Shown here piece by piece: positions 19,374 through 62,184 of a stretch of 64,000 nt of DNA; position 1 is the stretch's first letter, and every line of letters starts with the position of its first letter. Source of the stretch: Macrostomum lignano (Eukaryota); contig NIVC01002161.1 in the NCBI GenBank assembly GCA_002269645.1, forward strand, positions 133,989 to 197,988, read 5' to 3'. Position numbers and translations under genes: made by a program. The notes below the pieces were generated by a model that worked only from the letters and a program-made list of their open reading frames with translations, was not told the origin of the DNA and made no database searches.

Positions 19374-22043
19374 CTATCCGGGACGAGGCAGCGACTTCAT
19401 TTCGATCGGCTGGGTGCCTTCGGCTGGCGGCTCGGCGCCGAGAATCTCGTCGGCATGGCTGACCACAGCGATGGAGGTGGCGACGCCGCGGCTGCTCTGG
19501 TAGTTGACGCCGCCGCCCTTCATGCAGCTGCGGCGGGGGCCGCGGTTGCCCCGGCCAGCCAGGCGGCTGCTGCGCCCGAACTGGCCAGCCTCGGCGGCCA
19601 GAACTGCCGCCGCGATGTCGCCGCTGCCGTTGCCGCCTTCGATGCCTCTGCATCGTTGTCTACGTCGACGCCGTCGGCTGCGCTGCATTCCACAGGCCTG
19701 CCCGGCTGTGCGACGGAAATTCCGGCTCAGACAGAAGAAGATGAGGAAGTGCACAGCGCTGTCCAGCGACACCAAAATGTCGTTCACGGCGTAGAACCAG
19801 TCCACGGAGCTGGTCAGGGACAGGTTCAGCATGATCAGAACGGCTCCCGGGGTCTCCAACACGTGGAACGAGATGGACAGGCACAGCACGATGGCTGTGG
19901 CCACTCGAGAGTTGCGACGAAGGTTGGTGACGCCGCTGCTGTTGCCCCGGCTGCTGCCGATCAGGCTGCCGCCTCCGCCGTCAGCAGCCGCGCTGCTGCC
20001 TCCGACGCCGGTCGTGCTGCTGCCCCGACTCGCAACAACTGACTCGCTGTTGGCCAGCTGCTCCTTGGCCCCGCAGAATTTGTAGGCCATGATGAAGGAG
20101 CAGATGAGAATGACTGGCACGGGAATGTAGGACTGGAACACGCGGCTCGTCATGAGCAGGGCCTGCCTGTCCAGCAGCTCCATCAGGCCGGGCGTGTAGA
20201 GACCGCCGATGAGCAGCGAAATGACGAACACGACGCCAAACACCATCAGCTGCATTCGCTTGGTGAAGCAGTGCCGGAAAGCGATGGGGTTCGTGGTCGC
20301 GGCGGTCCTGAACAGGGTCATGCACATCGTCCACTGGTTGCGGTTGAGCAGGGCGACCAGAACTAGGGCAAACATTACCTGGTTGGGGTTGTGACAGGGT
20401 TACAGTTCGGTTCATTGCCCGGGCACGGATCGAGGCTTGTTAAGGTTAGCCTGCAGGAGTGGAGGAACGCCCATTCAGTTGAGAACGTGTTTTCTAAATT
20501 GACTGGTGTGACTAAATCTGAGCTGATGAGAGCAGTGTTAGCATCTGTCTGCAGTCTTGTGTTCTTAAAAATTATTAGAGTCGATAACTGGGTTGAAACC
20601 GTAGGCCAGCCGTCCACAACTTGCCAGCATTATACTTTGAAGTATTGTAAATCTACCCGATATTGAGCAGATGTGCAACCGACAGCTTAGCCGCAGCTAT
20701 TGCGCAGCGCATCTGAAGGCTGCGTACGGCTGTTCAGTCCATGGATTAAGGGGGGGAGGTCGTCACACACACCCTCAATTACTCCAGCTAATGCAGACAC
20801 CCATTTTACAGCTGGGTGAGCTGAAGCAATGCAGAGTTGAGTGTCTTTCTCCAGGACACAATTGTCTAATGCGATCGAAAGTCGAACCCCCGACCTTTCA
20901 GTTTTGAGTCCGATGCTCACGACTGAATGTCTACTGCGATGTCTACCGGAATGAAATGTCCTAGTTGCGCCTCGCCCATCTCCGTGACTCATGGAAGCTC
21001 GTTTCTCAGAAAACAGAACGCCTCCAGATTTCCAAACATTTGTAACATTTCCGTGCGTCAGGGGCCAAGGGGGCGTCGGGCGCGGGAAGAGCCGGGACCC
21101 ACAGAATCCAAGGTTCAGGAAACACGTATTTTGCGGAACCCGACTCTCGAAAAGTGGAGTAGCTCGTACAAGAAATGGGAGGTGCCTGGAGCTTCATGTG
21201 AGCTGCGGAGTTGTTGTGCAAAAAAGCCCGGGCAGCACAAACTGGAGGGAATGCAAAAATATGTTTTTTTAATAAATCAGGTGATTTTTCTTCCGCATTG
21301 TAACAAAGTATCTTTAGAACTTTCTAGTTTGCTTAAATTTTCAAATTCGTCGCAACTGTTAGAGCAGGGATGCCAAGCAAAGAAAAGGAACATTGAAATC
21401 GATAGCTATAAGCCTTTCTTCATGCTGTCATGACAATCTGCTTCAAGTGAAAGCTGTTAACTTATTGGAGATCTAAAGTAAACCTCAGACTTTAAGCGCT
21501 TGTCGCAATCAAGGCAAGGTAAGCAGTCACCACTGACCCCTTTTGAGCATTGTACGATCAGATACTCCCGCAGGGTGGCATGGCGGCCATGACTTTCTAA
21601 TCGTCAGTCATGTACACACTGAGCCTTAGGGTTTGCCCCTTCTCTGTAAATCGCTACTGATTCGCCCTACATTGCTTAGCTACCTCAGCATAAGAGCTAC
21701 GATTCAATTGTTGAACTACCAGCAAGCTGCCCCTCACCTCGTAGATGGTCTTGAACGGCTCCTTGTTGTAGGTGCCCTGCAGCTGGACAGTCAGGTCCAG
21801 GCAGAACGTGGCCGAGCACAATAGGCAGTAGGCCACCTGGCAGGCCTCCAGAATGATGAGGCCGACATCGAAGACGTCCCGCCTGGCCAGGTACTTCCTG
21901 AGCAGCACGGACAGGGAGAAGCTGCTCATGCCCAGGCCCAGCAAGGACACGAAGATCGAAGCGCTCCGGGCGTAGAAGAAGCCGGCGCTCAGATTATCAA
22001 CAGCGGCGGCCTGGGTGGTGGCGGCTAGCGTCTCAGTTTCCAT
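19374..22043 (-). CDS. Orphan class A (rhodopsin-like) GPCR resembling FMRFamide/peptide-receptor-like families; exons 22043-21738 and 20378-19374 (about 436 aa)
   Basis: Seven hydrophobic segments across two exons joined in phase 0 (TIYE|VMFALVLV). TM3 end is TLFRTAATTNP, TM6 is AIVLCLSISFHVLETP, TM7 is LVSLDSAVHFLIFFCLSRNFR. Donor gtgagg at 21737, acceptor ccaaccag at 20379, Kozak gccATGG. Confidence 0.88.
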
Positions 22044-22103
22044 GGCGATGCAGGGCTCAGGCGAGAAACGGGAGCGAAGCGAATGGCGGAACTCCCGGCC
22101 CTC

Positions 22104-24808: not shown

Positions 24809-27800
24809 TCACTCTGACAACCTGCTGCTGTCGGCCTTCAACATTCGCTGCAGCTTCTCTGCTGAATCAATCTTTTCTTCATCCTGAAAGTTTAGATGAA
24901 GATAAAAGATGGGATGAGTGATGAGATGAGTGGGTCAAGCGCAGGCTCTGATGTGCCAGCGGCCCAGGCTCGATTCCAAGTGCAGTCACATTGATCTGAG
25001 GCTAAATCTCGGCTTGGCTCTGCTCGTGCAATGCAACATGAAGTGTACATAAAGTTAGGGCCGCTGTAAACTCCTGTGTGAGTGTGAGCCTGCGCGCATG
25101 ACTGTGTTTCTCCGACCCTCGGGGCCTCCGAAACTTCACAACAGCAACTCGGCCAGCGCAAGGTTTGTGTCTCTTCTTAGCTCTCTTCTCTCTCCTTTCA
25201 TATCTAATCTGATCTATCCTCTTATCTTCTCTCTCGCCTCTCACCTCTTCTCTCATCGTCATAAACACAAACAGCCTGGATTAAACATTCGCACTAAGAT
25301 CAACTCACCAGCTGAAGGAGCCGCTCGCACAGGGGAAACAGGTACATAACGGTGGCTTCATCGGGCACAGACTCAAGCAGCTGGGCCCGGACAGTCAGGC
25401 CAGTCTCTGGCCAGACTCCCGAAGGCTGCATCAGTTCGCGCAGCCTCAGACCGGTATCGTGCTGCTCCTCCAGCAGGTGCAACACGCAGGCGCTCTGGCA
25501 GGCAGCCAGCGCAGGTCTCAGAGCCTGCGGAGCTCCGAATTGGTGCACCAGGCCGTCCAGCACGTCAGCATTGATGGCGGTTCTGTAGGGCCTCCTGGCG
25601 AGCTCGTGCCTGACCTGCTGGAACTGCAGACATAGGGCCTGCTGAGTCAGGCTGAGCAGCTTGGCAACAGTGAGACTGCCCGCGTCCGGCTCCGGCAGAG
25701 CCTCAGGCAGTTGCCATGACAACGACGCAGAGGAGCTCATCAACGGGCTGCCACTCTGACAGTCGTTGGAGAACTCACGAATGGATCGTTGAAGGACAGC
25801 TTCTGGCCAATTCTGATCGCTCAGGTAGCGAAGGATGCTGATTAAGCAGTCTGTCAGCTTCCTGCATTGATGGCGGTTGGTTGGGGAAGCTGGCTTGAAG
25901 CTTCATCATTTAAGAGGATTCAAATTTTTGGTCTGTCTGAGACAGTTATATAGGTCACTTGGAGTGGTTGTGGGGGTTCGAGGTTAGGTCTCTGGTTATT
26001 TAAGTGGGTCAAAGTAGGTCTTTTAGGAGCTTATATGCCTTCTAGGGCCCGTAATTGGGTTTCAAAAGGGCCATTTTTAGGTTTCTTAGCATTGGTCCAC
26101 GACACTTTAAAATCCTATTTTAAGAGGCAGGGGTTTTGTGCACCCTGGCGCACTTTAAGTGACATTGTCACACAACCGGCGAGAGGCATTACTGCCCATT
26201 CCACCGACTCCCCTGAGCAGGCACACAAGCGCGCGGATACGTACGCAGTCATACGCACAGGCAGCGGCCCTAACTTTATTTATCCCTAGGCATGTACACT
26301 TCACTGTGCCTTGTGGGTTGCAGAGCCAAGCCGAGATTCCAGTTTAGCCTCAAATGAATGCGACTGCACTTGGAATCGAGCCTGGGCCGCTGGAACAGGT
26401 GACTACGGCAGGATCACTACGGCATCAGGGATGTGAATTGTCAGATTCAAAAAACTCAGGATTCGCACCTGGCATAGGTGTGATCCTGCTCGTGCAGCTC
26501 TTTCAGCCTGGCCACTTCAGCTGTGCTCAGCACTTCGATGCCCTCGCCAGCCCGATGTCTGAATCGGGTCATGAGCTCCACCGGCTGTCGCTGCTGGTGG
26601 TCGCTGAACCGCGGCCTCCAGCTGGCTGGCGGCAGGGCCCAGCTGCGACCGACTGTGAGCAGGTGACCCAGGGCCGCGTCCAGCAGAGCCCAGTCCAGGT
26701 GTTCGCTGGCCTCAGACAGCCGCGGATCGCTCGGACCGGAGAACTGAGCAGCCAGCCGGTCCAGCTCGGCCTGCTCGAGGCTGACCAAGCCGCATCTGGC
26801 AGCGGTGACCGACCGGGCAGGCAGGGTGACTGAGCACTGGCCGGTGAGCAGGTGGCCGAGTCCGCCGCCCTGCAGAGCCACAGCAGAGGCAGCCAGTAGG
26901 AAGCTGTTCGCCAGTGGGCAGAGTTGAGTAGCCAAGTCAGCTAGTTTTGAGCCCTCGGTGAGCACAGTCTCACGCAGGTGGCTGTCAGCTGATGCGCAGT
27001 CAGGCATTCCGAGTTGGCGCAGACCAGCTTGAGCAGCTGGCCACAGCGCAGCCGCTGCTTCATCTTGCTCAATCACCTCGGCAACGGTGAGCCGCTCCCA
27101 GCCGGCTCTGCTCACCTGGCCGTCAAGCACTGACACGCACCTCCTGTGCCAATCCAGCACTTTGCTGAGGTGCGCCATTTTAATCAGCGCGTCTTGATGC
27201 GCCAGCACCGCTAGTGTGAGATCCAGCCTGCCGGCCGCTGAGGAACTGGTTGCCGGGCTCAGCTGGCGGCCCAGCCACAGGGTGCGGACGTGACAGGCGG
27301 TCGACCAGTCCACTTCAACAGCAGGCCGCAGCAGTTTCTCCGGCACCGACGGCTGCTCAGGCGGCAGGGCGGCGTCGAGTTGAGCGGCCAGAACGCGAGG
27401 ATCGCCGGCCTGAGCAGCCGTCAAGCCTCGCTCAGCCAGCCGATCGGCTTTGAACTTGGCGACGCGCGCTCGACGACAGAGCAGCAGCAGAGCGGCCGAG
27501 TGGAGCAGCGAGCCAACAAACTGGGGGCACGGCTGCGAGGCGAACTGGTGCGCCAAGTCGCCAACCAGCTGCTGGCAGATCCAAGCCGGATCGTCCCAGT
27601 CCATGGCCAGCGCTGCGCGCATCTCCGAGAAGGCCTTGCCAATGAACTCGGAGACTCGGCCGGGGTGTCCGAGCTCGGCGCACAGGTCGACGGCGGCCGA
27701 GACGCTTCCGGAGCTCAGGCAGAGCAGCACGGATGAGGCGCTCGCGGCCCAGCGGAGTAGCGAAGTCGGCAGTCGCGGGCAGTCGGTCGCCAAATCCGAC

Positions 27801-30800
27801 GGCATCATGACGGCTTCAAGCGGACCGGAAGAGCCGCAGAGCGGGCAGCGGCTGCTGGAGGAAAAGAACGAGGAGGCATTCTTGACGGCGACAACCGTGA
27901 CGGCCAGACAGCGGGCGCAGCGGAGCGGATGAACTCCCGAAGTCAGCGGCAGCCTGGCGTCCAGCAGCAGCTTTAACTGTTTAGCAAATTCTCCGACTTT
28001 GCCGCCAGCGGCCAAGGTGGCGGCGCTGCCGAAGCGTCTTTGGCAGCCCAGCAGTTGAGCTGCTCCAGCCGACACCGCGGCAACCATGGAGCGGCCGAGC
28101 CAGTCGGCTCCGTTGTCCGGTGTCGCCTCTAGCCTGGGCTCATCTTCAACCAGGCGACTTCCCAGCAGCAGCCAGTCCAGCATGATGCGATCGGACTCCA
28201 CGGAGGCTGCTGGGTTCGATTCTTCATCAATCAACAAGTCAACAAGCCGACTGTGCAGCAGACTGCCAACTCGCTGCTCTTCTGACGCAACCGGCTGTCG
28301 GTCCAGTTTTCTCAAGAACACCAGCTCAATCCAGGCGGCAATTATGGCATTGACGGACGAGCTCGAACAGTTGAGCAGTCGTTTCAAAGCTTCGGGACTG
28401 TCAGGAGCTTGAAGGAGGTCGTTCAAAGCCGAGCACACGGCGGCGTGGACTGTCTCTGAGGAGTCGGCTGAGTCAGGCAGCGGCAGGAAAGGCAGCGGCT
28501 GCCAGGAGCTGTCGGTGGCCTTCAGCGGCAGGCCGGCAGAGGTCAGGCACCTCAGGACGTCCATCAGCGGTGCCAGCCGTAGGCCGGCCTGAGCGAAGGC
28601 GACAACCAAAGGATGGCCCGGTCGGAAACCGCTGCCTAGGTCGCTTCGTAGCTGATCAGCCAGCCTCTGTCCTTCATCGTTGAGTTCGAGTCGATTCTCG
28701 GTGAGAACGTATGACCGAGAGGCGGTCAGTTTGAAGCGGTGCAGACGGAGCAGGTCTGTCAGGCTCGGAGTCTGCGCGCAGGCGATGCTGTTCAGCGCTG
28801 CTAGCGGTGGCAGGCCAGCCAGCAGGGTCTCGGGAATGTGCGCGGCCACCAGCTGGGCCAGGTCCCGACCAGCCGGCATTCGCAGATGCTCGTCAACCCA
28901 GGCGGTGACGGCCGAGCAGGACGCGTCTTCGTCGGCTGCATTGTCGCCGCGACCGTTGTTGCTCTGGACGGCTCGCCATAGCAACGAGAAGCAGCCGATT
29001 GGCAGCTGCTTTTCGGTCAGTTTCAACAGGAAAGCTTTCGCCAGCCCGGTTGTCAGTGCGCCACGTTCGATAGCCTGCTGCAGGTAGAGGCTCCACAGAG
29101 ACTGCAGCTGCTGTTCCAGCTGGTCTTCGGGCACCGGGAGACCCTGCAGATCAGGCAGAGACTCCAGTAGAAGCTGCTCAATTCTGGCTACTCCGGACTC
29201 GCTGAACAAAGAGTCGGTGTTGCCCGTGTGCTCTGATAGAAAGCTCTGGACCCGGTGCAGACAGACAGCCGGCAAGCTGCAGGGGAGAGCCACCGTGGCA
29301 GCGAACAGGCGGCACATGCTGAGCTGCTCTGTGATTGGCTGAGGGCGGCAGGGGGTGGGAGAAGACAAGCTATATAAGCCCTAGTTTTGTTTTGCGAGCC
29401 ATCAATCGCAGGCCACAACTGGTCAGATGGGTAAGATCGGGTCAGAATACTGGGTCTCAGATCTTTAGAATTGAATTTTTACATTCAGATTCACACAGAT
29501 CTCCGGTGTCTAGGGTTAAGACAATATCCAGGGTCGAGATCGATATGCAGGGTCGAGATCGATATCCAGGGTCGAGATCGATATCCAGGGTCGGGATCGA
29601 TATCCAGGGTCGGGATCGATATCTAGGGTCAGGATCTATATCTAGGGTCGGGATCGATATCCACGGTCGGAATCGATATCTAGGGTCGGGATCTATATCT
29701 AGGGTCGGGATCGATATCTAGGGTCGGGATCGATATCTAGGGTCGGGATCGATATCTAGGGTCAGGATCTATATCTAGGGTCGGGATCGATATCTAGGGT
29801 CAGGATCTATATCTAGGGTCGGGATCGATATCTAGGGTCGGGATCGATATCTAGGGTCGAGACTGACAGCACCAAAGCTTAAAACACTTTTACCCCATGG
29901 CACATACATGTAGTGTGGGCTCCCCACCATCTAACACCCGGAGCACAAGATCCAGTCCACTCACCAGCTGGGCGCACTCCGAGTCCGCAAGCACAAGCAG
30001 AGCCCTGGCGGCCAGACGGTCCCAGTCGGACAGCGAGTCGGCCAGGCCGAGTTTCTGCAGGTTCTCGCTGCTCGGCAGCAGGCAGCCGGTCAGCCGTTCC
30101 GCCAGCTCGCCACGCTCGGTCGGCTCGTCCTCATCGTCGCGGTCGAGCAGGTCTGCTGGGCAAAGTTTCGGCGAGACCGACGTCAGAATCGCCCAGAGAC
30201 GCAGGGCGGTTGCCATGGGAGCAGCCAGGGCGATTGCCGACACCACGGGAGCCCAGCGGGTGCCGGCATCGGCGACTGCGGCAAGCGGCGTCATTGCCGT
30301 CAAGATGCTGTTGAACTGCTGCGACAGGTCGGTGCCGCAGGCGGACTCCGTTGCCATGGCGATGAGATCTCTAGCCAGCAAGTCGGCAGCTTTAGACTCC
30401 GGCGGCTGGTCTTCGTCGGCCAGTCCGAGCACCAACAGCCACGGCTTCAGCGCCGCCAAGGCCGCCTCAGCCGCGGCCTCCTGCGGCTCTTCGGCATCTT
30501 GGTCATCGTCGCCAGCGACAGCCGCAGCTCCGGCAGGGCTGGCAGCTGCTGAAGCCGCGGCCTTCAGATCAGCGAACACGAAGCCGGACAGCGGGAACCG
30601 AAGCGGACCGCCGCTGCCGCCGCCGCCGATGTCGCCGAGGTCGACGCGGAGCCGCCGCGACTGCACCAGGTGGCCGAGGCCGCGCACCAGGCAGTCCAGC
30701 GTGCGCGGTTCCAAAGCGTCGCAGTCGAAGGCGCGGGCATCGCGAAGGAGCCGCAGCAGGTCCAGCAGGCTGGCCTTGACGCGCCTGGCCAGGTGGTCGA

Positions 30801-33800
30801 TGGCGAAATCGGCGAGGGTGGCGAATCTGGCCAGCTGGGCGGCCTCCCTGGCCAGGCCGACCATCCAGTGTCCCGGTGAGAACTCCGCAGCTTCGCCGTC
30901 GAGATCGTCGCCGCCGCAAAAGTCCTCTCTGGCAGCCCGCTTGATGGCAGCATCAATCAGAGCTTCGACAAGTCCACGCCGAGATCTGAGCAGTCGGGTG
31001 GCGGCTTCGAACCTGGGCCCCGGCTCCAGGGCCTCGAGCAGAGCGTCCTGCAGTTTTGGGAGCGGGAGACTCGCGGCGTGATGTTGTGCTTATGAATCCC
31101 TAGCGTTAGTCTGTTAACTTCCCGGGTGTGGGAAAGTGACACACACTGCTAGGAAAGTGACACACACTGCTAGGAAAGTGACACACACTGCTAGGAAAGT
31201 GACACACACTGCTAGGAAAGTGACACACACTGCTAGGAAAGTGACACACACTGCTAGGAAAGTGACACACACTGCTAGGAAACAGATTGCTAGGAAAGTG
31301 ACAGATTGCTAGGAAAGTGACACACACTGCTAGGAAAGTGACACACATTGCAAAGAAAGTGACACACATTGCTAGGAAAGTGACACACACTGCTAGGAAA
31401 GTGACACACATTGCAAAGAAAGTGACACACACTGCTAGGAAAGTGACACACATTGCAAAGAAAGTGACACACATTGCTAGGAAAGTGACACACATTGCAA
31501 GGAAAGTGACACAGATTGCAAGGAAAGTGACGAGCGCGCTTAAAACTCTGCTCAACTAACCTGCAGCCCGGCAGTGGCCCGGGTTCGAACCGCGGCCGGG
31601 CAGCGGTCGGTGAGCAGCTGCCTCGCGGAGCTGCTGCCCACCAGATCCCGCAGAGTGTCGGCCGAGCAGCCGTCGTCAGCCGCGCCCAGCGACTCCAGAC
31701 AGAGCAGGCGCCAGTCCCGCAGCAGCGGCGACCACTGCCAGGTCTGGCGGCCCCTCGAAGCGCCGCCGCCGCCGCCCAGGTGGAAAATCCACAGCAGAGC
31801 CGTCGGGCCCGCGCTGGCGGTCTCCATCAGCGACTCCAGCAGCCAGCGGAGCTGAGGCGCCGAGTCCGCGTCCACAGACGGCCGACAGCTCAGGGCGACG
31901 ACGCCGCCAACTGAGTTGCGAATTGCCGCTGACAGCTCGTCTCTGCGCGATTGGTTGGGTGAGGAAAATGGTGCAGTCAGAGGGCGATTTTCCAGATGGT
32001 CAGAGGGCGATTCTTTGGATCGTCAGAGGGCGATTTTCTAGATGGTCAGAAGGCGATTTTCTAGATGGTCAGAGGGCGATTTTCTAGATGGTCAGAGGGT
32101 GATTTTCTAGATGGTCAGTGAGCGATTTTCTAGATGGTCAGAAAGCGATTTTCTAGATGGTCAGAGGGTGATTTTCCAGAAGGTCATAGCGCTTAAAGTG
32201 CGTTTTTCCGGATGGTCATAAGACTCTAACTCTCTCTCTCTGCCCCTCCCTCTTTCTCACCTCAGCTCGTCCTCTCCCATAAAGTCAATCAGCCGGATGA
32301 TGGAGCACTCGACGCCCAGCTGAAGCTTCCAGGCCGTGTCTTCCATCCGGGTCCTGGTGTACACCACCGTCCCCCGGACGCCGCCTCTGCCAAGCTGTTC
32401 AGCCACGTGCCGAGCCAGGGAAGTGTCCGACAGCTCCTGGAAGTATTGCCTCTGCAGGGCCTCGCGGCTCTCCGAAGGCAGTTCACTGTGCGACAGGCGC
32501 AGCACAGCGTCCGGGAAGGCCTGAGTCAGCAGGTGCTGCGGCAGCCGCTTTGCCGTCTCCTCCACAGAGTCGTCGGCGCCAACCAGCAGGTGCGAGGCGG
32601 CCAGCTCAGGATGATAGCCGCAGAAAGTCTCTTGGGCGGCAAATTCAAGCTTTTCGTGCTCCTCCTGCCATGCCAGGCCGCTTATGCTGCGGATTGGCAG
32701 TTTTAGGTGGTTTTGGAAATGAAAAGGCTTAGCTTTCTACTGAAAGTAGAATGTAAGAGTGTTTTAACTCGATGCATGATGGGAAAAATCAGTTGCTATG
32801 GTATTTTCGTTGCTATCCGATCTCTGGGCCAAAACCAACTAACAAAAACTGTGGAATCCTTGTTGCTAAGCTGTCTCTATGCCAAAACCAGTAAACATAA
32901 ACTGTGGAATCTTTGTTGCTACGCTGTCTCTAGGCCAAAACCAGTTAACATAAACTGTGGAATCATTGTTGCTATGCTGTCTCTGGGCCAAAGCCAGTTA
33001 CCATAAACTGTGGTATCCTTGTTGCTATGCTGTCTCTAGGCCAAAACCACTAAACATAAACTGTGGAATCATTGTTGCTATGCTGTCTCTGGACCAAAAC
33101 CAGTTAACATAAACTGTGGTATCCTTGTTGCTATGCTGTCTCTAGGCCAAAACCAGTTACCATAAACTGTGGAATCCTTGTTGCTATGCTGTCTCTAGGC
33201 CAAAACCAGTTAAAATAAACTGTGGTATCCTTGTTGCTATGCTGTCTCTGGACCAAAACCAGTTACCATAAAATGTGGTATCCTTGTTGCTATGCTGTCT
33301 CTAGGCCAAAACCAGTTACCATAAACTGTGGAATCCTTGTTGCTATTGATGTGGCCGCAGCCTTCTGCTGCAAGCATAGGGCCGCAGTCACATCTTAGGC
33401 ACTGCTGTCCACTGCTAGTATCTGGAATAGGAATTTTCTGCTGCCTCCATGCACTCTAAGCAGCCTTCCTTGGCGCTCAGAAGTTGCACAATATGGCGCA
33501 ATCTTTAACATAGGAAATTAGGAAGTTTTGCCTAGCCTAGGGTTAGTTAGTGGAAGCCGCCAAATTTGGCGCTTGCCTTTGCTATTGTTGCCTGGCCTGC
33601 CGCGTACGATCGCTCAGTGTACGCAAGTCTAGTTAGCAGCACTCCTCCCCCGTGCGCTCTCTGGACCCTTCCCCCTTCTGCTCTCTCGTTCCTCCTGCGT
33701 CCGAGCCTCTCCCCATGCGTCATTCTATTTTTAGACGGAGGGTTTCGCGGACCGCGTGTCCCGAGCTGAACCCTCCCTCACGTGCAGCCTTGTGCGCACA

Positions 33801-36800
33801 AGCCCAAATTTGGCATGCTATTGTCACTAGTGGCTTGAGGCGACTGTCGGCGCTTCGTACAAGCTACTCTTTCCCCCATGTTTAATCAATATCTGTTGTG
33901 CATCATTATCCGCACTTTTCGGGCTGCAGTTCCATGGTCAAGCCACGGAATGCCCAAACGCTCCACCCTCCGCGTTCTATATTAACGAATGCAGGCCCGG
34001 TTGTCTGAATTTTTCCTCAGAACCGGTTTGACCGCTGGTCAGACTCGTTGAGAGCTATACTCAGCAACAGCTAAACCCCCCCCCCCCAACTCACGCTGTC
34101 ACAGGGGCACAAAAGTTAAGCAATGTCTTTAAGTGGGTTGAGTTGCGCCACCCCCTCCCCAAATCCCCCATGCCGCACTTTGCGCTCGCGTCTGGCGGCG
34201 GCAGCCTTCACACATTTCTGAGTCACCGATGGCATACAAAACTTTTGGGCCGTGTGACAGCGTGAGTTGGGGGGGGGGGGTAGCTGTTGCTGAGTATATC
34301 TCCGAGAAAGCGCTCTAGCGCCGGTTAACAGCGAAGCAAAGCTCCTGAGCAGGTCTTGGTAGAGCATTGCAGCGCTCAAGCAGAAAGCACGCTCCTGAGC
34401 AGGTCTTGGCCTGAGCAGGCCGCCCATCTGCGCGAGACGTAGCTATTAGGTTAACAGGAGTTAGGGGTCCTCTGAGAGCTAAACTCAGACACGCTCAAGC
34501 GCGGACATTTGTCAGTGCCAGGACTGCGCCGCTCAGGCCATTGCTACCATTGAGTCCTGTCACTTGGACATTGAAATATCTGAGACTAGTTGTTCTAGCG
34601 TTATTTATTTGCGTGGAGCCCAAACAGACCCCTTCATTGCGGATCCTACGGTTCCCACGCTGGTGGCAGCACTACCCTTAATTTTAGATTTCTCCCCAGT
34701 CTCAGCCCCCATAAGTATACTCAGCAAGGTTGCTTCAGCTGCTTCAAGGTTGCTTCAAGGTTGCTTCAAGGTTACTCAGCAAGCTAGGCCAAAACCAGTT
34801 AACTTAAACTGTGGTATCTTTGTTGCTATGCTGTCTCTAGGTCAAAAAAGACTCTCTAACCCTATTACGAGTTGCTAAGACTAAGAGCAGTTTTAAGATA
34901 AAACGTCTAAAATGGTAACAACTTTATTTGACTTAATTATTTGCTAATCACCTGGTCGCCTTAGCAACAAAACTGTCCCGAAGCTGTTCAACCGCGCCAC
35001 GCTGCTCTGCGGACAGAACGTCGCCAAATCCGAACGTTTGCTTCTCGAAACGGTTGAGAAAGGCTCTGTCCACGCGCTCCAGAGTGTCCGCCCTCACGAG
35101 CACTACGCAGCGGAACTTGTCATCAACGGAGCAATTCTTGTTAGCTTGCGTTCCCATAGCAACGCGGCAGTAGCGACACTGGTTATACTCGGAGTAGTTT
35201 TGGTTGAGCATGTCGTACAAACTGCCGTAGACGAGTTCAAAGTCCTTGAACAGCACAACAATGCCGTTCTCCATGCACATCATCACTTCATGCAGTTTTC
35301 TCAGCGCGAACTGCTCGCTGAGCTGGTCCCTATCGTATGCGCTGCCGTGAAGCACTCGGAACGGGCGCTCCTTCCGCTGAAGCACATGGGCCAGCAGGTC
35401 AAGATCCCGGTCAGTGTCCGTGATCAGCATCAAGTGCCGCGCGCTCTTGTCCTCTAGGCTCTCCATGAGCACCGATACCTAGGGGACGGTTAGTTAGCGA
35501 GTTACGAGCGTAGATCATGGATCACGTTAAGCTTCCGCACAGCAGCCTTGACCTTCTACTAACCGTCAGGCATGTCAGGCTAACCTCAAGCACGTGGAGG
35601 TTCGGTCCCGATTTCTCTACGCCAACCCCTTTTATTTGAAGCAAAATTGCGCCTGATATGCCGAAAACCCGGGGGGGGGGGAGGGAATGGTTGTGAGGGA
35701 GTCTCACAGTCTCATTATGTCCTCCATCAAGGCAGGGTAACATAATGAGAGCTGGTGTGGGGGGTAACATAATCATCATTAATAGATAACATAATGGGGG
35801 CATAAAGTAACATTACTATCGCTCCTATTCTTCAACCAAACATATAAAAGAGCGTTTTTCGTGGTCATCACGTCCCGTTAGCATTTGACGCTTCAAATGA
35901 AGGGATTGGCGTAGAGAAACCGGGACCGAATGTTTCGGGCTCCATTTTGACTCTTAAGTTCACATCCCCTTTAAGTGCACAAGCCCTAAATGAATGAGCT
36001 TGGCGCAAGAATAAGATGTGCAAGACCCATACAAAAATCCGTGATAATTGATTTGGGAAAACAAGAGAATTCAAATGCAAACCTTGTCTTGTTGACGAAG
36101 TGTTTCCTTGTAAGCATTTTCCAGTCCCTCGTAAGCGAAGTCAAAATGTTCGAGAAAGTACGGCTGCTCCAGACCGGAGAAGTTCCTCACCAAGCCGCGA
36201 CTGAGTATAGCCAACTTGTTCAACTGCATTCGAACATTTTCTTTAGCGAGAAACTTCACCAGGTAATAGTAGTCTCTGAGCCCGTGGAAATCCTCTTCTA
36301 CTTGGCTGTCGAAGTATTCGTGACACGCCTGAGCAATTTTTTGCATATCTTCTTTGTCGATTCGACCGCCAACCTCGCCCTGACCGTCTTGCTTGTCCTG
36401 CTGCAGAACAATGGCACTGCCTGTGATGAGCAGCTCCTCGGTTGTCATATCCGGCCTGGAGATGTGCACAGCTCGGTTCATCTTGGCCGGGTCCAGGGCC
36501 CAGTTGGACAAGCCCAGTACGGCAACACGAGCTTTGCAGGTGAATTCCGACTCTTCAGGCTCTAGGAGGCTGTGCAGAACTTTGAGCGGGTTGTGACGCG
36601 ACTTCTCCGCTAGACCGATCTCGTCTAGCAGGACTACATAGCTGCGAGGAGAGGGAGGTGAACCAGTGTAAGAATGCATCTCGGATGTATTGTTAGGTCA
36701 CAACTCATCATAAACCTCGTATGTAATGCCACTAGACCATCACTGATGATTGATTAAGCATCCCGGATTCAATACTAATTCGTCACTGATCATTGATAAA

Positions 36801-39800
36801 ACACTGATGCCATTCATCATGATTCAGTACTGAAGCATCCCGGATGTAATACTAGGCCATGGCCATCACTGATCATTGATCAATCACTGATGCCATTCAC
36901 CAATAATCATAAATTAAGCATCCCGGATGCAATACTAAGCCGTCACTGATTAAGAATCCTGGATATAACACTATGCCATCATTAACATCCATTCCGGACG
37001 TGATGCTCAATCATCTATCATTCCGGACGTGATACTAGACCATCGTGCCTACCAGATGTAATGGCATCTTCATCCTTCAAATTGTGTTTTTAATGAAGTT
37101 AGTTTTTAAAGGAAAGGAAGTTTTCAAACGGGTTTTTTAGTTAGAGGTAGGGGCTGTGTGCACCCTGGCGCACTTCAAGCGACATTGTCACACAGCCGGC
37201 GAGAGGCATCACTGCCCGTTCCGCCGACTCCCCTGAGCAGCGCACACAAGCGCAAGGATACGTACGCAGACATACGCACAGGCACACAGTCACAAAGGAG
37301 TGTACAGCGGCGGTGTTTATTGCACGAGCAGACCCAAGCCGAGATTCCAATTTAGCCCCAAATTAATGTGTCTGCATTTTGAATGCATAATCGAGACTGG
37401 ACGAATGGCGCATACATCGGTGGCTAGACCGCTAAGCTACGCCCCATCAAAGAACAGAGAGAGCTAAGCAGTACACGTATGTCAAGGGAATTTACCGATA
37501 CTCATCCTTTTCCGCATCCTCATCAGCTTTCTTCGTGGCTCTGCGGAACACTTTGAAGATGCCCTCCGAAGTGGACGCCTCGGAGCCCTGGTAGCAGAAA
37601 AACCTCAGGGCTGGCAGAGCTTTGAAGAACGGATCGCGTGAGTCCCGACCTCGCAAATTGCTTCTGAGCAGAGAGACGGCCAGACTCTTGGAGCAGCCAG
37701 GCTTGCCAACTAGGAACACCGGAACTTTGTTGTAAACGCAGCACAGCAGGATAAACACGTTCTCTAGCAGGGCCGCGTTTTGAGCCACATTTTCCGGCAG
37801 CTCCATTCGATTGAGAATGTCTTCCTGCTCCTCGCGTATTGTTTTCTGTATTGACACAGCAGATTATGTACATGTACGCGTGTAATTAGCCATAAATCTA
37901 CATGCACCAGTGCTCACTGACAACTCGGGTACCAAAAAGGGCATTTACATGGTTATGTAAATTTAGGAGAAGCTAACTGTACCAGATGGGGTCAGAAACG
38001 TATAAAAGCTGATAATCAAGCTTACCTCAGCATTGTCAGACAGGAGAGACAAAATTTCGCAAGCGTATTCGGTTCGCTTGTCTGCAGACCGGATGCGCAC
38101 ATAGTAGCACACGTACAAAGACATGACCAGAGGCAGAGTCGATAAACTTCGATATACATCGCTTTTCTCATGCCTCAGTTCGTAGAACCAATCGAAGAAG
38201 GCGATGAACTCGCAGCATCGGCGAACATCTCGCAAGCTGATTGCGTACTCAGTTTTCTCCAGCTTTCGAATGAATTTCTGGGACTTCCACACCGCATCGG
38301 CTAGCGCGTTCAGCAGAACCGACTCCATCTCCGGCAGCTGGTCTCGCAGCATCCGCTTGATGTACTGCTCCTCATCGGTGTCCCGCAGCCGGCCAAAGTC
38401 CCACACCAGGTCCAGAATGGACTCGGGCAGCGGGTTGACCCGGTACACCAGGTGGCGCATGCGGTCATGCTCGCGTTCGGCTAAGCGGAAGCCGGCAGTC
38501 AGAGCGGCATCCGGGTCTCTCAGCCTGTAGGGATTCGAAGCGGCCAAGAATCGCAGGTTGGGCGGCAGCGGAGCACCTAGTAGTCGCCTGTGACATATGA
38601 GCTCCTTCAGCATGCCCAGGTGATCGCAGGTGTTAATCTCGTCGAGAAACAGCCAAACAGTTTTTGTGTCGCGGATCTTATCGCTTGTTTTGCGTTTAAT
38701 AATCAGTTCCCTGGCCTCCTCGGCGGCAGACTGGGCAGTATGGATAATTTGCTCCTGCGTGGTGCCCGCGTGGAAGTTCAGCACGCGGAGGCTGGCCTCG
38801 TGTACCTGAGTTAAGTAGAAAGATATTTGCGTAAAGCAGGGGTCGGCGAACCCCGGCCCGTGGGCCACATGCGACCCGCGAAGCCTCTCTATCCGGCCCT
38901 CGGGTCCTTTGAAACTTATAATAGCGATCAGGCCCGCTCAAAGTGTGTGTCACGTCAGTTCTCTCGGATCACCTATCCTCTCTCCTTTCTTTCCTCCCTA
39001 CTCTCATCGCTCCCCTCTCCCTCCTCTCCTCTCTCCTTTCTTCTCCTTTCTTCTCCCTTCTCTCCTCTCTTCCCTCTCTCTCCTCCTCTCTCCTTTCTTT
39101 CTCTCCCTTCTCTCCTCTTTTCCCTTTCTCCCTCTCTCCTTTCTTTCTCTCCCTTCTCTCCTCTCTTCCATCTCCTCTCTCCTTTCTCTCATCTCTTCTC
39201 TCCTCTCTTCTCTCCTCTTCCCTCTCCCCTCTCCTCTCCCTCTCTCCTCTCTCCCTTCTTCTCTCTCTTCTCTCAAATTTATTCCTTCTCCTTTCCACTC
39301 TCATTTTTCCCGCAACAACGAGCTGAATTTTTTTCTGGCCCTTGAGGAAGAAATGAAAAAACAGACAACTATGACTAAATATAGATTCTGTAACCGCCAT
39401 AAAATCCCACAGCTGATTAGCAAGCGTTACAGCATTGCATATAAATCATACTGGCTTACTTTGCTCAAGAATCTGATCAGGCTAGTCTTTCCGCATCCGG
39501 TCTCTCCGATGATGAGCACCGGCACGTCGCAGTCGATTCGCAGGCTGATCAGCACCATCTTGAGAAAGTTGTCAGCCGTGATGGCGTATCTTCCGCTGCC
39601 GCCGCTTGGCTCGTCGTCCTCATCAAATTGCACTCCAGGCGGCCGGTAGCCAGGGTTTCCGCGGCCAGCGATGCGTACCAGCTTCTCCAGCAGCTTGGCC
39701 TGCTTCATCTCAGTGTAGTCAACCAGCCGGCCGCTGTGCATGTTTCGCTCGAATAGTCGCCGGATTTCGTCAGGTACATCGCGGAGACTGCGGTAGACCA

Positions 39801-42800
39801 ATTCGACAGCGGCAATGTCCTGCTTCTGAAACACGGGCGCCAGGTGGTTAAACGATTCCCAGCTGAGGAAGCCCTCGAATCGTTCAACGGAATCATCCGT
39901 GACCTTGGCGTGCACGCCGCGCTTCGACTCTGATTGCTTGCCTTTGGAAAGAGCAACAGATCGGCTCATGAGCTGACAAATGGACTTAAACAGAAACCGA
40001 ACTAAGTCGGATCGAATTGTTGGCGAAGCATCGCGACCGAACGCTTCTCTGACGCCGGAGATTTTGAAAAACGCGCTCGAAGACAGCTTCTTCAATTGGT
40101 CAGCTAGAACACGAATCGTGGACGTAACAGTCAGGTAGGAATGACCTTCGAGCGGAGCCAGAGCTTTCTGCAGCCTAGAGCGACACTCGTCAGCTTCCAG
40201 TACGCTTTCTAACGAAACTTCAACCGAATCTAAATTTCGCAAATCCAAAGCTCGCTGATACTTAGCAACTATCTGCACCGGACTTTTTGGCTCGCGTGAT
40301 ACCATCAGGTCGTTAAGACATCGCCACTGAAGTATCGTCACATTCTGTTCAGAGAGGCGGTTAAACAAAACGAACTGTTCCGCAAGCTCGTCATTGGCAC
40401 TGTTTGCCAGCTCAATGACAACTCGGCCAGGTTTGAACGCCAGCAGATAGCTGGAGTGGCACAGCATCCCGGTGAGCAGCGCCTCAAACAGCATGGTTTC
40501 TAGAGCGCCTGCGTCATCGATCCAACCAACATCCAGATGTAGGAGGTCACGCTGCTCTAGGCCGCTTAATTTCTCCGCTAAATCGAGCTTGCCGATCTTG
40601 CCGCTGACGTGAACGCAGCGCAGGCGGCTCTCAGTGTCAGCGGCCAGCCTGCGCACCAGCTCGGTCTTGCCGCATCCAGCCCGCTCAGACCGGACAAGTG
40701 TCACAGAGTCGCCGCAGATCGCGCCCAGGGCTGCGGAAAGTTGCAAGTCCGAGTCAAAAACGGGCTGCTGTTGCTGGCATTGGTCTCTGAAGATTCCAAG
40801 TAGACGATGTGTGCTAGCAGCTCTGCAGAATACTGCTAGACGGCCTAGGTTGCCTGCATCGCAGAGGCCTAGAATGCTGGCAGCCAGGTGGTTGAGCAGC
40901 CGCTGACTGAGCAGTTCGGTGCAAAGAATGTAGTGCACTCGGCTGGGGCTGCTAGCGCTTCGCTGAAGCAGCAGTGAAATCTCCTCCTCGGCGGTGTCAG
41001 CAGAGCAAAACAGAATCTCCGACGGTAACGGTGAATGAGTCTGTAGAGCATAGGCGAAAAAGTAATAATTTGGTTTTCAGAATTCAGTGAGCCCCGGTAA
41101 GAAAGGTACCTAAGTCAGGAAGCGTCCTAGAGTCCCTTACGTCGCCCCAGTCGTTGCAGGTAACATGGGTAAAGTGGAAAATGTGACTTTATACAACTCT
41201 AAAATGACGAGACGTCACAGTAAAAGTCGCCAAAAAAGGTTGTCAAAGAGTCACTTAAGAGTCAATTTGAGGCGTTATATTGTTGGGACTCTGAAACGAC
41301 TCTGGGACCACGCCACGCAAGTAACTCTGGGGCGCTTCTAGGCGCTTCTGAGGCATTCTAGAGTCGTTGTAGAATCAATGAATTGCGTCTAAAGCGCATG
41401 TGCGTCATTAACGTTGCATTTCGTATTTATAACTATTCAGGCTACTTAAATCAGTAGAAATTTGAGAGCTATAACACGAAATTTGGAGACACTTTCGACT
41501 CTTACGACTCTACAACTTATGTGATGGACTCGTAACTCAACAGTCAACTTTCCTTCGCATTACGGTCGTTTGAGTCTTTAAAAAGCCACAAAACTCGCCC
41601 AGAGTCACTAGTGAGCTGTTTGCAATGACTAGCGATTCCTGTCACGATAAGTTTTTAAACGGGAGCTTGAGCTAACGTCTTAATGCAAAGTTGCCAACTC
41701 ACCTGAGACTGCCGCCACACGGTAAGGAACGCTCTAACAGAGTGCGGCTCTTTACTGGGATCAACGCGTAAAACCATCAAGCGGCCTCGTTGAACACACA
41801 GTGGAGATTCGGGGAGCTGGTGAGCGCAATCGAGTTGGCGGTCGGGAAGTGCAGGCAATTGAGACAGCCAATCAGCGAGCGCTATGATATGTTCTCGTAG
41901 GATGTCTTTCTGCCCTGTTGGGCCTAATTTTCTGACTTTGTCGACGTTGAATTCGAGGTGCGGCATATTGCCATACTGCGGCAGCCTTTGTGCATCTCTG
42001 TTAACAAATAAAAGTATTGGCCGTATATGTTGATCTGACACATTGGTTTCGGTTAGAAAGTGGTGCATTCTGAGCAGGTTTGCGCCGAATAAGTGGTTTA
42101 ATAGAGGCCTTTTCTGTCTTGCCTCGCTTAGGACAGATTCCCATATTTCTAAATTACGGCGAAACTTTGCCTCTCGATCTGCCAGTTTTTTAGCCGAGCG
42201 TTTTTTGTCGGCTTCGAAGTGAAGTGGATGACCGACTGATTGCAGTTTCCTATGCAATTGGAACACCTGGGAAGAAAAGTGCAGGTTTTTCCTCTTAAAT
42301 TTTACATAAATAGGTAATCCTGGTAAACAAAAATTATAGAAACTTACCCTTTCAAGAGAGTCGATCAGGTCGACAAATATTTTTAACTTCCTCCGATCAT
42401 CGTCTGTGACGAGAGAGTACGAAGAGCCTACGATCATTAACACGCGGCATCGATGGTCAATCAGCTTTGACAGTGGCCAATGTTCGTCACATGTAGCATC
42501 GAATAACTCGCAAGTAGATTTAGACTCACAAATTTCAATTGAAAACATCAGATCATCTTCATCCATGCACTCAACCAAAGCTAGAGCTTGTTTTCTAGAA
42601 GAGTCGCCTCGAGAGGACAAACTGTCGTGCAGATTCTGAATAGCTACAAGATGACTAAAGCAAGTCTCAATACATTCCACGGCATCCTTGGCTCGGGCAT
42701 CTGAGACAACGAAAATCTGATCCGAGCCCTCGAGGCCAAAGTTAAGAGCCATTGCCAGTTCTTCCATGCTTGTCTTCATTCCCAAGATGCCTTCTCCTGA

Positions 42801-43580: not shown

Positions 43581-44284
43581 NNNNNNNNNNNNNNNNNNNN
43601 NNNNNNNNNNNNNNNNNNNNNNNNNNNNNNNNNNNNNNNNNNNNNNNNNNNNNNNNNNNNNNNNNNNNNNNNNNNNNNNNNNNNNNNNNNNNNNNNNNNN
43701 NNNNNNNNNNNNNNNNNNNNNNNNNNNNNNNNNNNNNNNNNNNNNNNNNNNNNNNNNNNNNNNNNNNNNNNNNNNNNNNNNNNNNNNNNNNNNNNNNNNN
43801 NNNNNNNNNNNNNNNNNNNNNNNNNNNNNNNNNNNNNNNNNNNNNNNNNNNNNNNNNNNNNNNNNNNNNNNNNNNNNNNNNNNNNNNNNNNNNNNNNNNN
43901 NNNNNNNNNNNNNNNNNNNNNNNNNNNNNNNNNNNNNNNNNNNNNNNNNNNNNNNNNNNNNNNNNNNNNNNNNNNNNNNNNNNNNNNNNNNNNNNNNNNN
44001 NNNNNNNNNNNNNNNNNNNNNNNNNNNNNNNNNNNNNNNNNNNNNNNNNNNNNNNNNNNNNNNNNNNNNNNNNNNNNNNNNNNNNNNNNNNNNNNNNNNN
44101 NNNNNNNNNNNNNNNNNNNNNNNNNNNNNNNNNNNNNNNNNNNNNNNNNNNNNNNNNNNNNNNNNNNNNNNNNNNNNNNNNNNNNNNNNNNNNNNNNNNN
44201 NNNNNNNNNNNNNNNNNNNNNNNNNNNNNNNNNNNNNNNNNNNNNNNNNNNNNNNNNNNNNNNNNNNNNNNNNNNNNNNNNNNN
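43581..44284. other. Assembly gap (704 N)
   Basis: Run of N characters. Confidence 1.
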
Positions 44285-44685
44285 CTCTCTCCTCTCTCCC
44301 CTTCTCTCTCTCCCTCTCCTCTCTTCCCCTCTCCTCTCTCCCCTCTCCTCTTCTCCCTCTCTCTCTCCCTCTCCTCTCCCCCTCTCCTCTCTCCCTCTTC
44401 CTCTCTCCACTCTCCTCTCTCCCCTCTCCTCTCTCTCCCCTCTCCTCTCCCCTCTCCTCTCTCCCTCTCTCCTCCTCTCCTTTCTCCTCTCTCCTCTCGC
44501 CTCTCCCCTCTCCTTCTCCTCTCCTCTCTTCCCCTCTCTCTCTCCCTCTCTTCTCTCTCTCCTTTCTCCTCTCCTCTCTCCCCTCTCTCTCTCCCCTCTC
44601 CTCTTCCCCTCTCCTCTCTCCCTCTCTCTCCTCCTCTCTCCTCTCTCCTTCCTCTCTCCCTCTCCTCTCTCCTCTCTCCCCTCTT
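44285..44685. repeat. CT-rich microsatellite abutting the gap
   Basis: Only C and T on the + strand apart from rare bases. Confidence 0.95.

Positions 44686-45140: not shown

Positions 45141-62184
<17,044 letters not shown>

What the first reader, a model, noticed from the sequence alone, without database searches (positions are those of the whole stretch)
26469..31942. RNF213-like giant with intact ATPase motifs but no RING, and a C4 zinc ribbon in place of the RZ finger
Seen: Walker A/B motifs of the core AAA modules are intact (GETGCGKT/FLDEIN; GKPGCSKS/LLDEIG). The region after the AAA ring is close to full length, but I find no C3HC4 RING and no CPNGH...GEC...CxxC...GG..H RZ signature. 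The only Cys cluster is C-x2-C-x20-C-x2-C (RCARC...RCPLCG, 27919-27836), about 690 aa from the C-terminus. Established (from memory): human RNF213 is 5207 aa with the RZ finger about 700 aa from the end. RZ uses a catalytic Cys/His pair besides its Zn ligands to ubiquitylate bacterial LPS, and RING is dispensable for that. Inference: the ribbon is a positional RZ homolog that keeps four Zn ligands but has lost the catalytic Cys and His. That would make this an E3-dead or repurposed mysterin (sensor, decoy or ATP-driven scaffold) in invertebrate cell-autonomous immunity.
Basis: partly seen in the sequence, partly recalled or inferred. Interest (0 to 1): 0.75.

Follow-up and report, generated by a model that had tools for sequence, protein, structure and literature searches.

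The report
Flatworm RNF213 relative without ligase motifs
This is the tail of a giant flatworm (Macrostomum lignano) relative of the human immune and vascular-disease protein RNF213: its ATP-driven motor looks intact, but both known ubiquitin-attaching modules are unrecognisable, leaving a bare four-cysteine motif where the catalytic "RZ" finger should sit. It is a mildly interesting natural variant, not a new kind of system.

Summary
The window carries a multi-exon, minus-strand RNF213-family gene of Macrostomum lignano, already predicted as UniProt A0A1I8JA77. The Walker A/B motifs of AAA3 and AAA4 are intact, and AAA3-AAA5 match solved RNF213 structures (E=4e-109). The roughly 1,650 aa that follow stay open across five GT-AG exons. 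No RING or RZ finger is found by Pfam, regex or custom HMMs in any frame. One C-x2-C-x20-C-x2-C motif sits at 27919-27836.

For it:
- The motif lies at the same fractional position as the RZ finger of relatives: 0.60, against 0.59 and 0.63.
- Two relatives (L001, L003) also have a CxxC first knuckle.
- All five RZ-bearing relatives keep the nucleophile Cys. The flatworm has Ala at the aligned position and no His nearby.

Against it:
- The motif scores within six-frame noise against RZ models.
- Its flanks show no significant or collinear similarity to RZ-bearing relatives.
- AlphaFold2 models were unusable.

The tail is also compositionally drifted (GARP 33%, FYMINK 9%) and differs about five times more than the AAA exons between two gene copies. 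The published model's fusion to a downstream GPCR is probably an artefact.

The likeliest reading is an RNF213-family ATPase whose RZ finger has decayed to a zinc-knuckle relic. Interest is moderate to low.

The parts
39484..39507 (-). AAA3 Walker A, GETGCGKT
   Evidence: It aligns to mouse RNF213 GETGCGKT in a collinear alignment of about 850 aa (E=4e-109).
38632..38649 (-). AAA3 Walker B, FLDEIN
   Evidence: It aligns to mouse FFDEAN.
37684..37707 (-). AAA4 Walker A, GKPGCSKS
   Evidence: It aligns to mouse GKPGSSKS.
36614..36631 (-). AAA4 Walker B, LLDEIG
   Evidence: It aligns to mouse VLDEVG (E=5e-19).
34954..35478 (-). AAA5 exon, with FLNRFEKQ at 35061-35038
   Evidence: tblastn of P0001. 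It is aligned to RNF213.
32261..32688 (-). Exon holding the last stretch of detectable RNF213 similarity, which ends about 90-110 codons in
   Evidence: The donor is GAG|gtgaga.
31561..31942 (-). It has no detectable homolog outside M. lignano.
   Evidence: Acceptor is cag|AGAC and donor is CAG|gttagt.
29965..31047 (-). Second exon of the interval. It is Ala/Leu/Gly-rich, with GC 0.68.
26469..29338 (-). Large exon of 957 codons carrying the C4 motif. If left unspliced, the frame stops at 26458-26456.
   Evidence: Its only hit among 1.84 billion representative proteins is P0001.
27836..27919 (-). C-x2-C-x20-C-x2-C motif, CARCLAVTVVAVKNASSFFSSSSRCPLC. It is a candidate zinc ribbon and a possible relic of the RZ finger.
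   Evidence: The four Cys are conserved in P0001, with one F>S change in the linker.
27872..27886 (-). 'VKNAS', the segment that aligns to the G-x-C-G nucleophile motif of RZ fingers. Ala replaces the catalytic Cys.
   Evidence: hhalign and HMM alignments. All five reference RZ fingers keep the Cys.
25303..25861 (-). It ends LQLVS, with a stop at 25302-25300. An alternative donor CTG|gtgagt at 25309 is used by the public model.

Best explanation
The locus encodes a Macrostomum lignano member of the RNF213 (mysterin) family of about 3,570 aa.

Shown:
- The dynein-like AAA core is conserved through AAA5.
- The two ATP-hydrolysing modules, AAA3 and AAA4, keep their Walker A and B motifs, so ATP binding and hydrolysis are expected.
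- The region that follows has the length of RNF213's AAA6-hinge-E3-CTD half and is kept open across five exons.
- That region has diverged beyond recognition and shifted strongly towards GC-rich codons (Gly/Ala/Arg/Pro).
- It has no RING, as in its nearest relative with a readable C-terminus.
- At the relative position of the RZ finger it keeps only two CxxC knuckles.

Inferred:
- These four Cys are the remnant of an RZ finger of the CxxC-first-knuckle subtype.
- The remnant still folds around zinc.
- It has lost the nucleophile Cys (now Ala), the IGG motif and the proposed general-base His.
- The protein therefore cannot take ubiquitin from an E2 by the RZ transthiolation route. It acts, if at all, through its ATPase, as a non-catalytic or otherwise repurposed paralog.
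For: Identity of the gene:
- Family membership of the AAA core: P0001 against solved RNF213, E=4e-109 over residues 1044-1892/1912. The window's own exons give 1e-25 and 5e-19.
- Organism and gene model.
- Intact ORF of 1,774 codons over five GT-AG exons.

Absence of RING and RZ:
- Pfam, regex and six-frame HMM searches.

Case for an RZ relic:
- The motif is unlikely by chance, P=0.014-0.027.
- Its fractional position is 0.60, against 0.59 (L001) and 0.63 (mouse).
- Within the 1,774-aa tail it is the single best match to RZ models, E=0.05-0.09.
- hhalign pairs it with the Pfam-certified RZ of L001. Deleting it drops the alignment score from 32.5 to 23.7.
- Relatives L001 and L003 have the same CxxC first knuckle. 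Five of five relatives keep the nucleophile Cys that is Ala here.

Signs of relaxed constraint on the tail:
- GARP 33% and FYMINK 8.7%, against 23% and 24% in the AAA part.
- 1.31% isolated amino-acid differences between the two copies in the tail, against 0.24% in the AAA exons.

Role of C4516 and H4537 in RZ catalysis: PMC11549300.
Against: - The ribbon is not recognisable as RZ by any statistical test. PF20173 gives no hit at E<=10, while the L001 control scores 43.5 bits.
- As a fragment it scores 6.3-7.5 bits against my RZ HMMs. Random out-of-frame fragments of the same window reach 10.6-11 bits.
- Smith-Waterman of the flanks against L001 or mouse is at null level, z=-0.8 to 0.9.
- The collinear hhalign score is matched by 22 of 60 block permutations.
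- Both AlphaFold2 models were uninformative and drew a helix through the motif.
- Zinc binding, ATPase activity and lack of E3 activity are untested.
- L001 itself lacks the His base, so the catalytic requirements of this subfamily may differ from human RNF213.
Confidence: 0.55

Rival explanations
1. The C4 motif is not an RZ derivative. It is either a chance cysteine cluster or an independently acquired small zinc ribbon, in a lineage-specific helical tail whose relation to the RNF213 E3 module is lost or was never there.
For: - The ribbon scores inside six-frame noise against RZ HMMs, and there is no PF20173 hit.
- Its only weak Pfam hits are generic zinc knuckles, DnaJ_CXXCXGXG and zf-Sec23_Sec24, at E about 0.1.
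- The flanks show no significant similarity to L001 or mouse, and collinearity is not above the block-permutation null.
- The tail has no homolog in 1.84 billion representatives other than itself.
Against: - The motif is improbable by chance (P about 0.02).
- It falls within 0.01-0.03 of the fractional position of RZ in two relatives.
- The tail has the expected length and directly continues a bona fide RNF213 AAA core in one gene.
- The CxxC first knuckle and the R-C-P-x-C-G second knuckle match the L001 RZ.
Confidence: 0.25
2. The protein is still a ubiquitin (or ubiquitin-like) ligase. It would use a different catalytic residue elsewhere in the tail, a partner E3, or an isoform or exon not visible in this window.
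For: - The post-AAA5 region has 43 Cys and 33 His.
- The long ORF is maintained.
- L001 has a Pfam-certified RZ yet lacks the His base, so catalytic details vary in this subfamily.
- The 5' exons (P0001 residues 1-238) are not in the window, and there is an assembly gap at 43581-44284.
Against: - No RING, RZ, HECT, RBR or other E3 domain appears in Pfam scans of the whole model.
- Nothing RING- or RZ-like appears in any frame of the 64 kb.
- The tail shows compositional drift and faster divergence, which suggests weak constraint.
Confidence: 0.1
3. The tail, or the whole gene copy, is decaying. It would be a redundant copy in a neopolyploid genome under relaxed selection, on its way to becoming a pseudogene, and the C4 motif has no function.
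For: - M. lignano has a recent whole-genome duplication (PMC10733133, PMC5704211).
- The tail is GARP-rich and FYMINK-poor, and it differs five times more than the AAA exons between the window copy and P0001.
- One segment of about 25 codons is read in different frames in the two copies (27432-27683).
Against: - There are 1,774 codons without a stop across five exons with intact GT-AG sites.
- GC3 (0.72-0.78) exceeds overall GC (about 0.64), as expected for coding sequence.
- The AAA motifs are intact.
- The differences from P0001 may be assembly errors in the older assembly.
Confidence: 0.1

Closest known systems
Mammalian RNF213 / mysterin (human 5,207 aa; mouse 5,148 aa; PDB 6TAX, 7OIK, 8S24)
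   Same: - A collinear alignment of about 850 aa covers AAA3-AAA5, with both Walker A/B pairs conserved.
- There is a weak match to the preceding degenerate P-loop, 'SERAGxGK'.
- The tail after AAA5 is of similar length, about 1,680 aa against about 1,890.
- A small Cys-rich element lies at about 0.6 of that tail.
   Different: - There is no RING.
- None of the RZ signature is present: CPxGH, GECG, IGG and His are all absent.
- There is no detectable sequence similarity after AAA5.
- The N-terminal part is about 1,300 aa shorter.
- The tail is strongly GARP-biased.
L001: an RNF213-like transcript contig from Logan sample SRR23272282 (organism unknown). It is the nearest relative with a readable C-terminus.
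   Same: - It is 48% identical in AAA4, and phmmer gives 1e-26 to 1e-40 through AAA4-AAA5.
- It has no RING.
- Its finger has a CxxC first knuckle and an R-CPxCG second knuckle.
- The finger is at the same fractional position, 0.59 against 0.60.
   Different: - The L001 finger is a certified RZ (PF20173, 43.5 bits) with the G-N-C-G nucleophile and the IGG motif.
- The L001 tail is still demonstrably related to mouse RNF213 (hhalign E=3e-5; SW z=10.5). The flatworm tail is not.
RZ-type zinc finger (Pfam PF20173; RNF213 and ZNFX1)
   Same: - It has four potential zinc ligands in two knuckles separated by about 20 residues, with a hydrophobic strand after the first knuckle.
- Its position in the host protein is the same.
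   Different: - It fails the Pfam model.
- It lacks the nucleophile Cys and the base His that define the catalytic function (PMC11549300).
- The spacing is 20 residues, against 15-17 in most fingers. L003 shows that longer spacers occur.

Membership tests
RNF213 family (AAA core) | Dynein-like AAA core with collinear homology across AAA3-AAA5 | tested here: met
   P0001 against PDB RNF213 gives E=4e-109 over residues 1044-1892/1912. The window exons alone give 1e-25 and 5e-19.
RNF213 family (AAA core) | Intact Walker A and B motifs in the two active modules, AAA3 and AAA4 | tested here: met
   GETGCGKT/FLDEIN and GKPGCSKS/LLDEIG align to the mouse motifs. ATPase activity itself cannot be tested here.
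RNF213 (as E3 ligase) | C3HC4 RING domain in the E3 module | tested here: not met
   No Pfam RING was found. No RING regex matched in any frame. Mouse RING against the six-frame translation gave noise only. The relative L001 also lacks it.
RNF213 (as E3 ligase) | RZ-type zinc finger recognisable by profile (PF20173) | tested here: not met
   There was no hit at E<=10 on a 78-aa segment, while the L001 control scored 43.5 bits against a cut-off of 27. Custom HMMs gave 6.3-7.5 bits, within noise.
RNF213 (as E3 ligase) | RZ nucleophile Cys (human C4516, in G-x-C-G) | tested here: not met
   The aligned segment is V-K-N-A-S, and the motif has only four Cys. All five reference fingers keep the Cys.
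RNF213 (as E3 ligase) | RZ general-base His (human H4537, IGGxxH after the second knuckle) | tested here: not met
   The sequence after CPLCG is SSGPLEAVMMPSDL..., with no His for about 50 residues. L001 also lacks this His.
RNF213 (as E3 ligase) | Homology of the post-AAA5 region to the hinge, E3 module and CTD | tested here: inconclusive
   phmmer found nothing. hhalign against L001 scored 32.5, against a shuffle null of about 20, but 22 of 60 block permutations reached that score and flank SW was not significant. Length and finger position agree.
RNF213 (as E3 ligase) | E2-to-E3 transthiolation activity | not testable with these tools
   This needs a biochemical assay.
Zinc ribbon (C4) | Two CxxC knuckles that bind one zinc ion | tested here: inconclusive
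   The sequence pattern is present and conserved in both copies. The AlphaFold2 model of the 94-aa segment has pLDDT 48 and no knuckle geometry. Zinc binding cannot be tested here.
CARD-domain protein (name carried by UniProt A0A1I8JA77) | Recognisable CARD / death-fold domain | tested here: not met
   No Pfam CARD was found at E<=1 on the whole model, or at E<=10 on seven 330-400-aa segments covering residues 1-760 and 1801-3570. The PROSITE profile behind the name could not be run.

The most novel reading that the evidence does not exclude
A naturally 'ligase-dead' RNF213. In this reading, a flatworm has kept the ATP-driven dynein-like core and a zinc-stabilised stump of the RZ finger under selection while discarding both ubiquitin-transfer sites. 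The ATPase/coat-forming function of the family would then be usable on its own, as a sensor, scaffold or regulator of catalytic paralogs. Alternatively the tail hides a new catalytic arrangement.
Probability: 0.25. Interest if true: 0.55.

Novelty: new variant of a known kind. Interest (0 to 1): 0.35.

Why it matters
RNF213 is studied for moyamoya disease and for coating and ubiquitylating intracellular pathogens. How its ATPase and its RZ ligase depend on each other is still an open question.

A natural family member with an intact motor but no nucleophile would be a ready-made separation-of-function variant. It would also show that the RZ finger can decay to a structural knuckle.

The relatives found on the way add two points. 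RING-less RNF213-like proteins exist outside vertebrates. So do RZ fingers with a CxxC first knuckle in place of CxxxH.

The practical value is limited. The gene is one fast-evolving copy in a neopolyploid genome, and nothing here shows what it does.

Tried and rejected
1. The search for homologous proteins on the 970-aa ORF returned nothing. This was a false negative, because the full HMMER scan found P0001. Three further calls failed. The last returned only fragments of 330 aa or less.
2. AlphaFold2 without an alignment gave pLDDT 40 for the 970-aa exon and 48 for a 94-aa ribbon segment. I did not run Foldseek, because matches to such models are meaningless.
3. I first read the hhalign chain of seven 'anchors' around the ribbon as evidence of collinear homology. 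I withdrew that reading. Block permutation reached the real score in 22 of 60 runs, deleting the ribbon removed the excess, and Smith-Waterman of the flanks was at null level.
4. Adding mouse RNF213 to the L001 profile did not raise the score: 29.5 against 32.5.
5. The metagenome scan for RZ relatives returned only a mouse RNF213 cDNA contaminant, L009. It was useful as a reference sequence but added no new relative.
6. I tried to link a downstream motif to the moyamoya residue R4810. The numbering did not fit, so I dropped it.
7. I looked for the source organism of SRR23272282 and for literature on RNF213 in flatworms and other invertebrates. Nothing was found.

Full report
**What the locus is**

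The window is eukaryotic DNA. Its introns are GT-AG and full of tandem repeats, and there is an assembly gap at 43581-44284.

A full HMMER scan of 1.84 billion representative proteins with the 970-aa ORF (26456-29368, minus strand) found exactly one hit, P0001. P0001 is UniRef A0A1I8JA77 of the flatworm Macrostomum lignano, 4,020 aa, auto-named 'CARD domain-containing protein'. It maps collinearly onto the minus strand from 43394 to 19377 at 93-99.8% identity, apart from its first mapped segment at about 75%, where the two gene models differ. The window is therefore this gene or its homeolog or allele. M. lignano is a recent polyploid.

**Gene structure**

The gene does not end there. A GT donor at 26469/26468 (TAT GCC AG|gtgcga) joins exon 25861-25303. 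My spliced model, from exon 32688 to 25303, is 1,774 codons with no stop and canonical junctions.

That last exon ends LQLVS-stop. It also offers a good donor (CTG|gtgagt), which the public model uses to continue into exons 22103-21690 and 20399-19377. Those exons encode a 7TM receptor (Pfam 7TM_GPCR_Srw) and contain a possible start Met of their own, so the fusion is probably an annotation artefact. This cannot be settled without RNA data.

**The AAA core**

P0001 matches solved RNF213 structures at E=4e-109 in one collinear stretch. Residues 1044-1892/1912 align to mouse 2352-3255 and human 2432-3356, which is AAA3 through AAA5. The window's own exons reproduce this.

They lie at 39.5, 38.6, 37.7 and 36.6 kb, outside the stated interval. 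A weaker match covers the degenerate upstream P-loop 'SERAGCGKT'.

Membership of the RNF213 family is therefore established for the motor.

**The tail**

- The 970-aa ORF has no hit in the PDB at E<=1.
- It has no Pfam family.
- It has no relative other than P0001.
- The word-indexed search that also returned nothing is not informative, because it missed P0001 itself.

Pfam scans of the whole model and of 400-aa segments at E<=10 show no RING, RZ, CARD or any other domain after AAA5.

I addressed a missed exon in three ways:
- Regexes for RING and RZ in all six frames. They matched only a translated 21-nt intronic repeat at 31131-31531.
- RZ HMMs built from relatives, run against all six-frame fragments.
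- Mouse RING and mouse RZ sequences, run against all 1,784 six-frame fragments of the window. Only noise was found.

**The C4 motif**

CARC-x20-CPLC is at 27919-27836. It is the only CxxC pair in the 1,652 post-AAA5 residues. It appears in 1.4-2.7% of shuffles. It is conserved in P0001 with one linker change. As a pattern it is real and mildly improbable.

**Is it a remnant of the RZ finger?**

The most useful evidence came from relatives.

L001 was reached through an AAA4 hit, P0004, which is 48% identical in AAA4. It is an 8.3-kb transcript-like contig. It encodes AAA4-AAA5 followed by a long ORF with a Pfam-certified RZ finger (43.5 bits) and no RING. Its tail is still demonstrably related to mouse RNF213 (hhalign E=3e-5; SW z=10.5).

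Its finger reads HYQ-CGNC-SYIFIVGNCGALSETGR-CPEC-GATIGGG. The first knuckle is therefore CxxC, not the CxxxH of mammals.

Further RZ fingers lie downstream of AAA4 in three other relatives, L002, L003 and L005. L003 also has CxxC.

All five reference fingers, mouse included, keep the G-x-C-G nucleophile. The flatworm segment aligns as PLR-CARC-LAVTVVAVKNASSFFSSSSR-CPLC-GSS, with Ala in place of the nucleophile Cys and no IGG or His.

I measured the finger's position between the end of AAA5 similarity and the C-terminus. It lies at 0.60 in the flatworm, 0.59 in L001 and 0.63 in mouse.

**Why this falls short of proof**

- The ribbon is the best match to my RZ HMMs inside the tail (E=0.05-0.09 for that one sequence). 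Scored as a fragment, it reaches only 6.3-7.5 bits. Random out-of-frame fragments of the same window reach 10.6-11 bits.
- A collinear hhalign alignment of the flatworm tail to the L001 tail looked promising: 32.5 against 20±3 for shuffles.
- That signal did not survive controls. Permuting 60-aa blocks reached the score in 22 of 60 trials. Deleting the ribbon lowered it to 23.7. Smith-Waterman of the flanks was at null level.
- Against mouse there is nothing at all.
- Both AlphaFold2 runs, made without an alignment because none exists, were unusable.

The case for an RZ relic therefore rests on context: the same gene family, the same tail length, the same relative position, the only Cys cluster, and knuckle details shared with L001 and L003. 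I put it at roughly 0.55-0.6.

**State of the tail**

The tail's composition is unusual. GARP residues make up 33% and FYMINK 8.7%. The corresponding figures are 23% and 24% in the AAA part, 24% and 21% in L001, and 19% and 23% in mouse. Exon GC rises from about 0.51-0.55 to 0.61-0.69.

Isolated amino-acid differences between the window copy and P0001 are 1.31% in the tail against 0.24% in the AAA exons. One stretch of about 25 codons is read in different frames in the two copies. Older-assembly errors may contribute to both of these.

Together this suggests weak constraint on the tail sequence. That fits loss of catalytic function, and it explains why homology cannot be detected. The open frame of 1,774 codons argues against a dead gene.

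**Mechanism and comparison**

The supported part is that an RNF213-family ATPase is present and that no known E3 catalytic element is present.

The inferred part is that the C4 motif is a zinc-binding stump of RZ and that the protein cannot perform RZ-type transthiolation. That route requires C4516 and probably H4537 in human RNF213 (PMC11549300).

The protein works like an RNF213 motor and is a family member by its AAA core. It fails the RING and RZ tests that define RNF213 as a ligase.

Absence of a RING is shared with L001, so it is not a peculiarity of this gene. Absence of the nucleophile is unique among the six sequences compared.

An immune role, or a role as sensor, decoy or scaffold, is speculation that nothing here tests.

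**Verdict**

This is a new variant of a known kind, already present as an unreviewed automatic prediction. Interest is moderate to low (0.35).

Noticed in passing
window 19377-22103 (minus strand): Two exons encode a 7TM receptor (Pfam 7TM_GPCR_Srw, E=3e-6). The public model P0001 fuses them to the RNF213-like gene. The upstream exon has its own stop two codons after the donor that was used, and the receptor exon contains a possible start Met. The fusion is probably an annotation artefact.
   Followed up: partly
window 29524-29859, 31131-31531, 31976-32186, 32809-33346: Each intron of the C-terminal region carries a tandem array, with periods of 19, 21, 23 and 53 nt and 9-20 copies. The 21-nt array translates to CHFPSSV repeats that satisfy an RZ-like regular expression. 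This is a trap for motif scans.
   Followed up: yes
window 43581-44284 and about 44300-51500: An assembly gap (a run of N) is followed by about 7 kb of strongly strand-skewed short tandem arrays, with AT skew down to -0.97. They read open in several frames. The gene's 5' exons (P0001 residues 1-238) are not found in the window.
   Followed up: partly
window 27432-27683 (minus strand): P0001 reads about 25 codons here in the alternative frame ('RRLAAPLGRSAAALS'), against the window's 'VGSLLHSAALLLLCRRARVAKFK'. Either the two copies differ by paired indels, or the older assembly has indel errors.
   Followed up: partly
window 26469-32688 versus 34954-41043: There is a sharp compositional step within one gene. 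The tail exons have GC 0.61-0.69, GARP 33% and FYMINK 8.7%. The AAA exons have GC 0.51-0.55, GARP 23% and FYMINK 24%.
   Followed up: yes
P0001 (UniProt A0A1I8JA77): The database name 'CARD domain-containing protein' is not supported by Pfam, either on the whole model at E<=1 or, at E<=10, on 330-400-aa segments covering residues 1-760 and 1801-3570. The PROSITE profile that presumably gave the name could not be run.
   Followed up: partly
L001 5771-5845; L003 11782-12249: RZ fingers in these RNF213-like relatives have a CxxC first knuckle instead of CxxxH, and the L001 finger lacks the proposed general-base His. The L003 finger is interrupted by an in-frame stop (11878-11880) in AT-rich sequence. 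That could mean a reassigned stop codon, as in ciliates, or an intron.
   Followed up: partly
L009 (metagenome contig ERZ786672 NODE-1): A 'metagenome' contig carries an uninterrupted 1,724-codon ORF that matches mouse RNF213 wherever compared (RZ region and downstream), ending at residue 5148. It is evidently a mouse cDNA or host contaminant in that assembly.
   Followed up: yes
window 8731-9741 (minus strand): GC-rich ORFs contain 'CPWTLWSAWSAAC...RRRNRLCRC', which resembles a thrombospondin type-1 repeat. I did not check it.
   Followed up: no
The word-indexed protein search returned no hit for a query whose near-identical protein is in the collection. Low-complexity words (poly-A, L and S) probably saturated the candidate list. 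Negative results of that tool on such sequences should not be trusted.
   Followed up: yes
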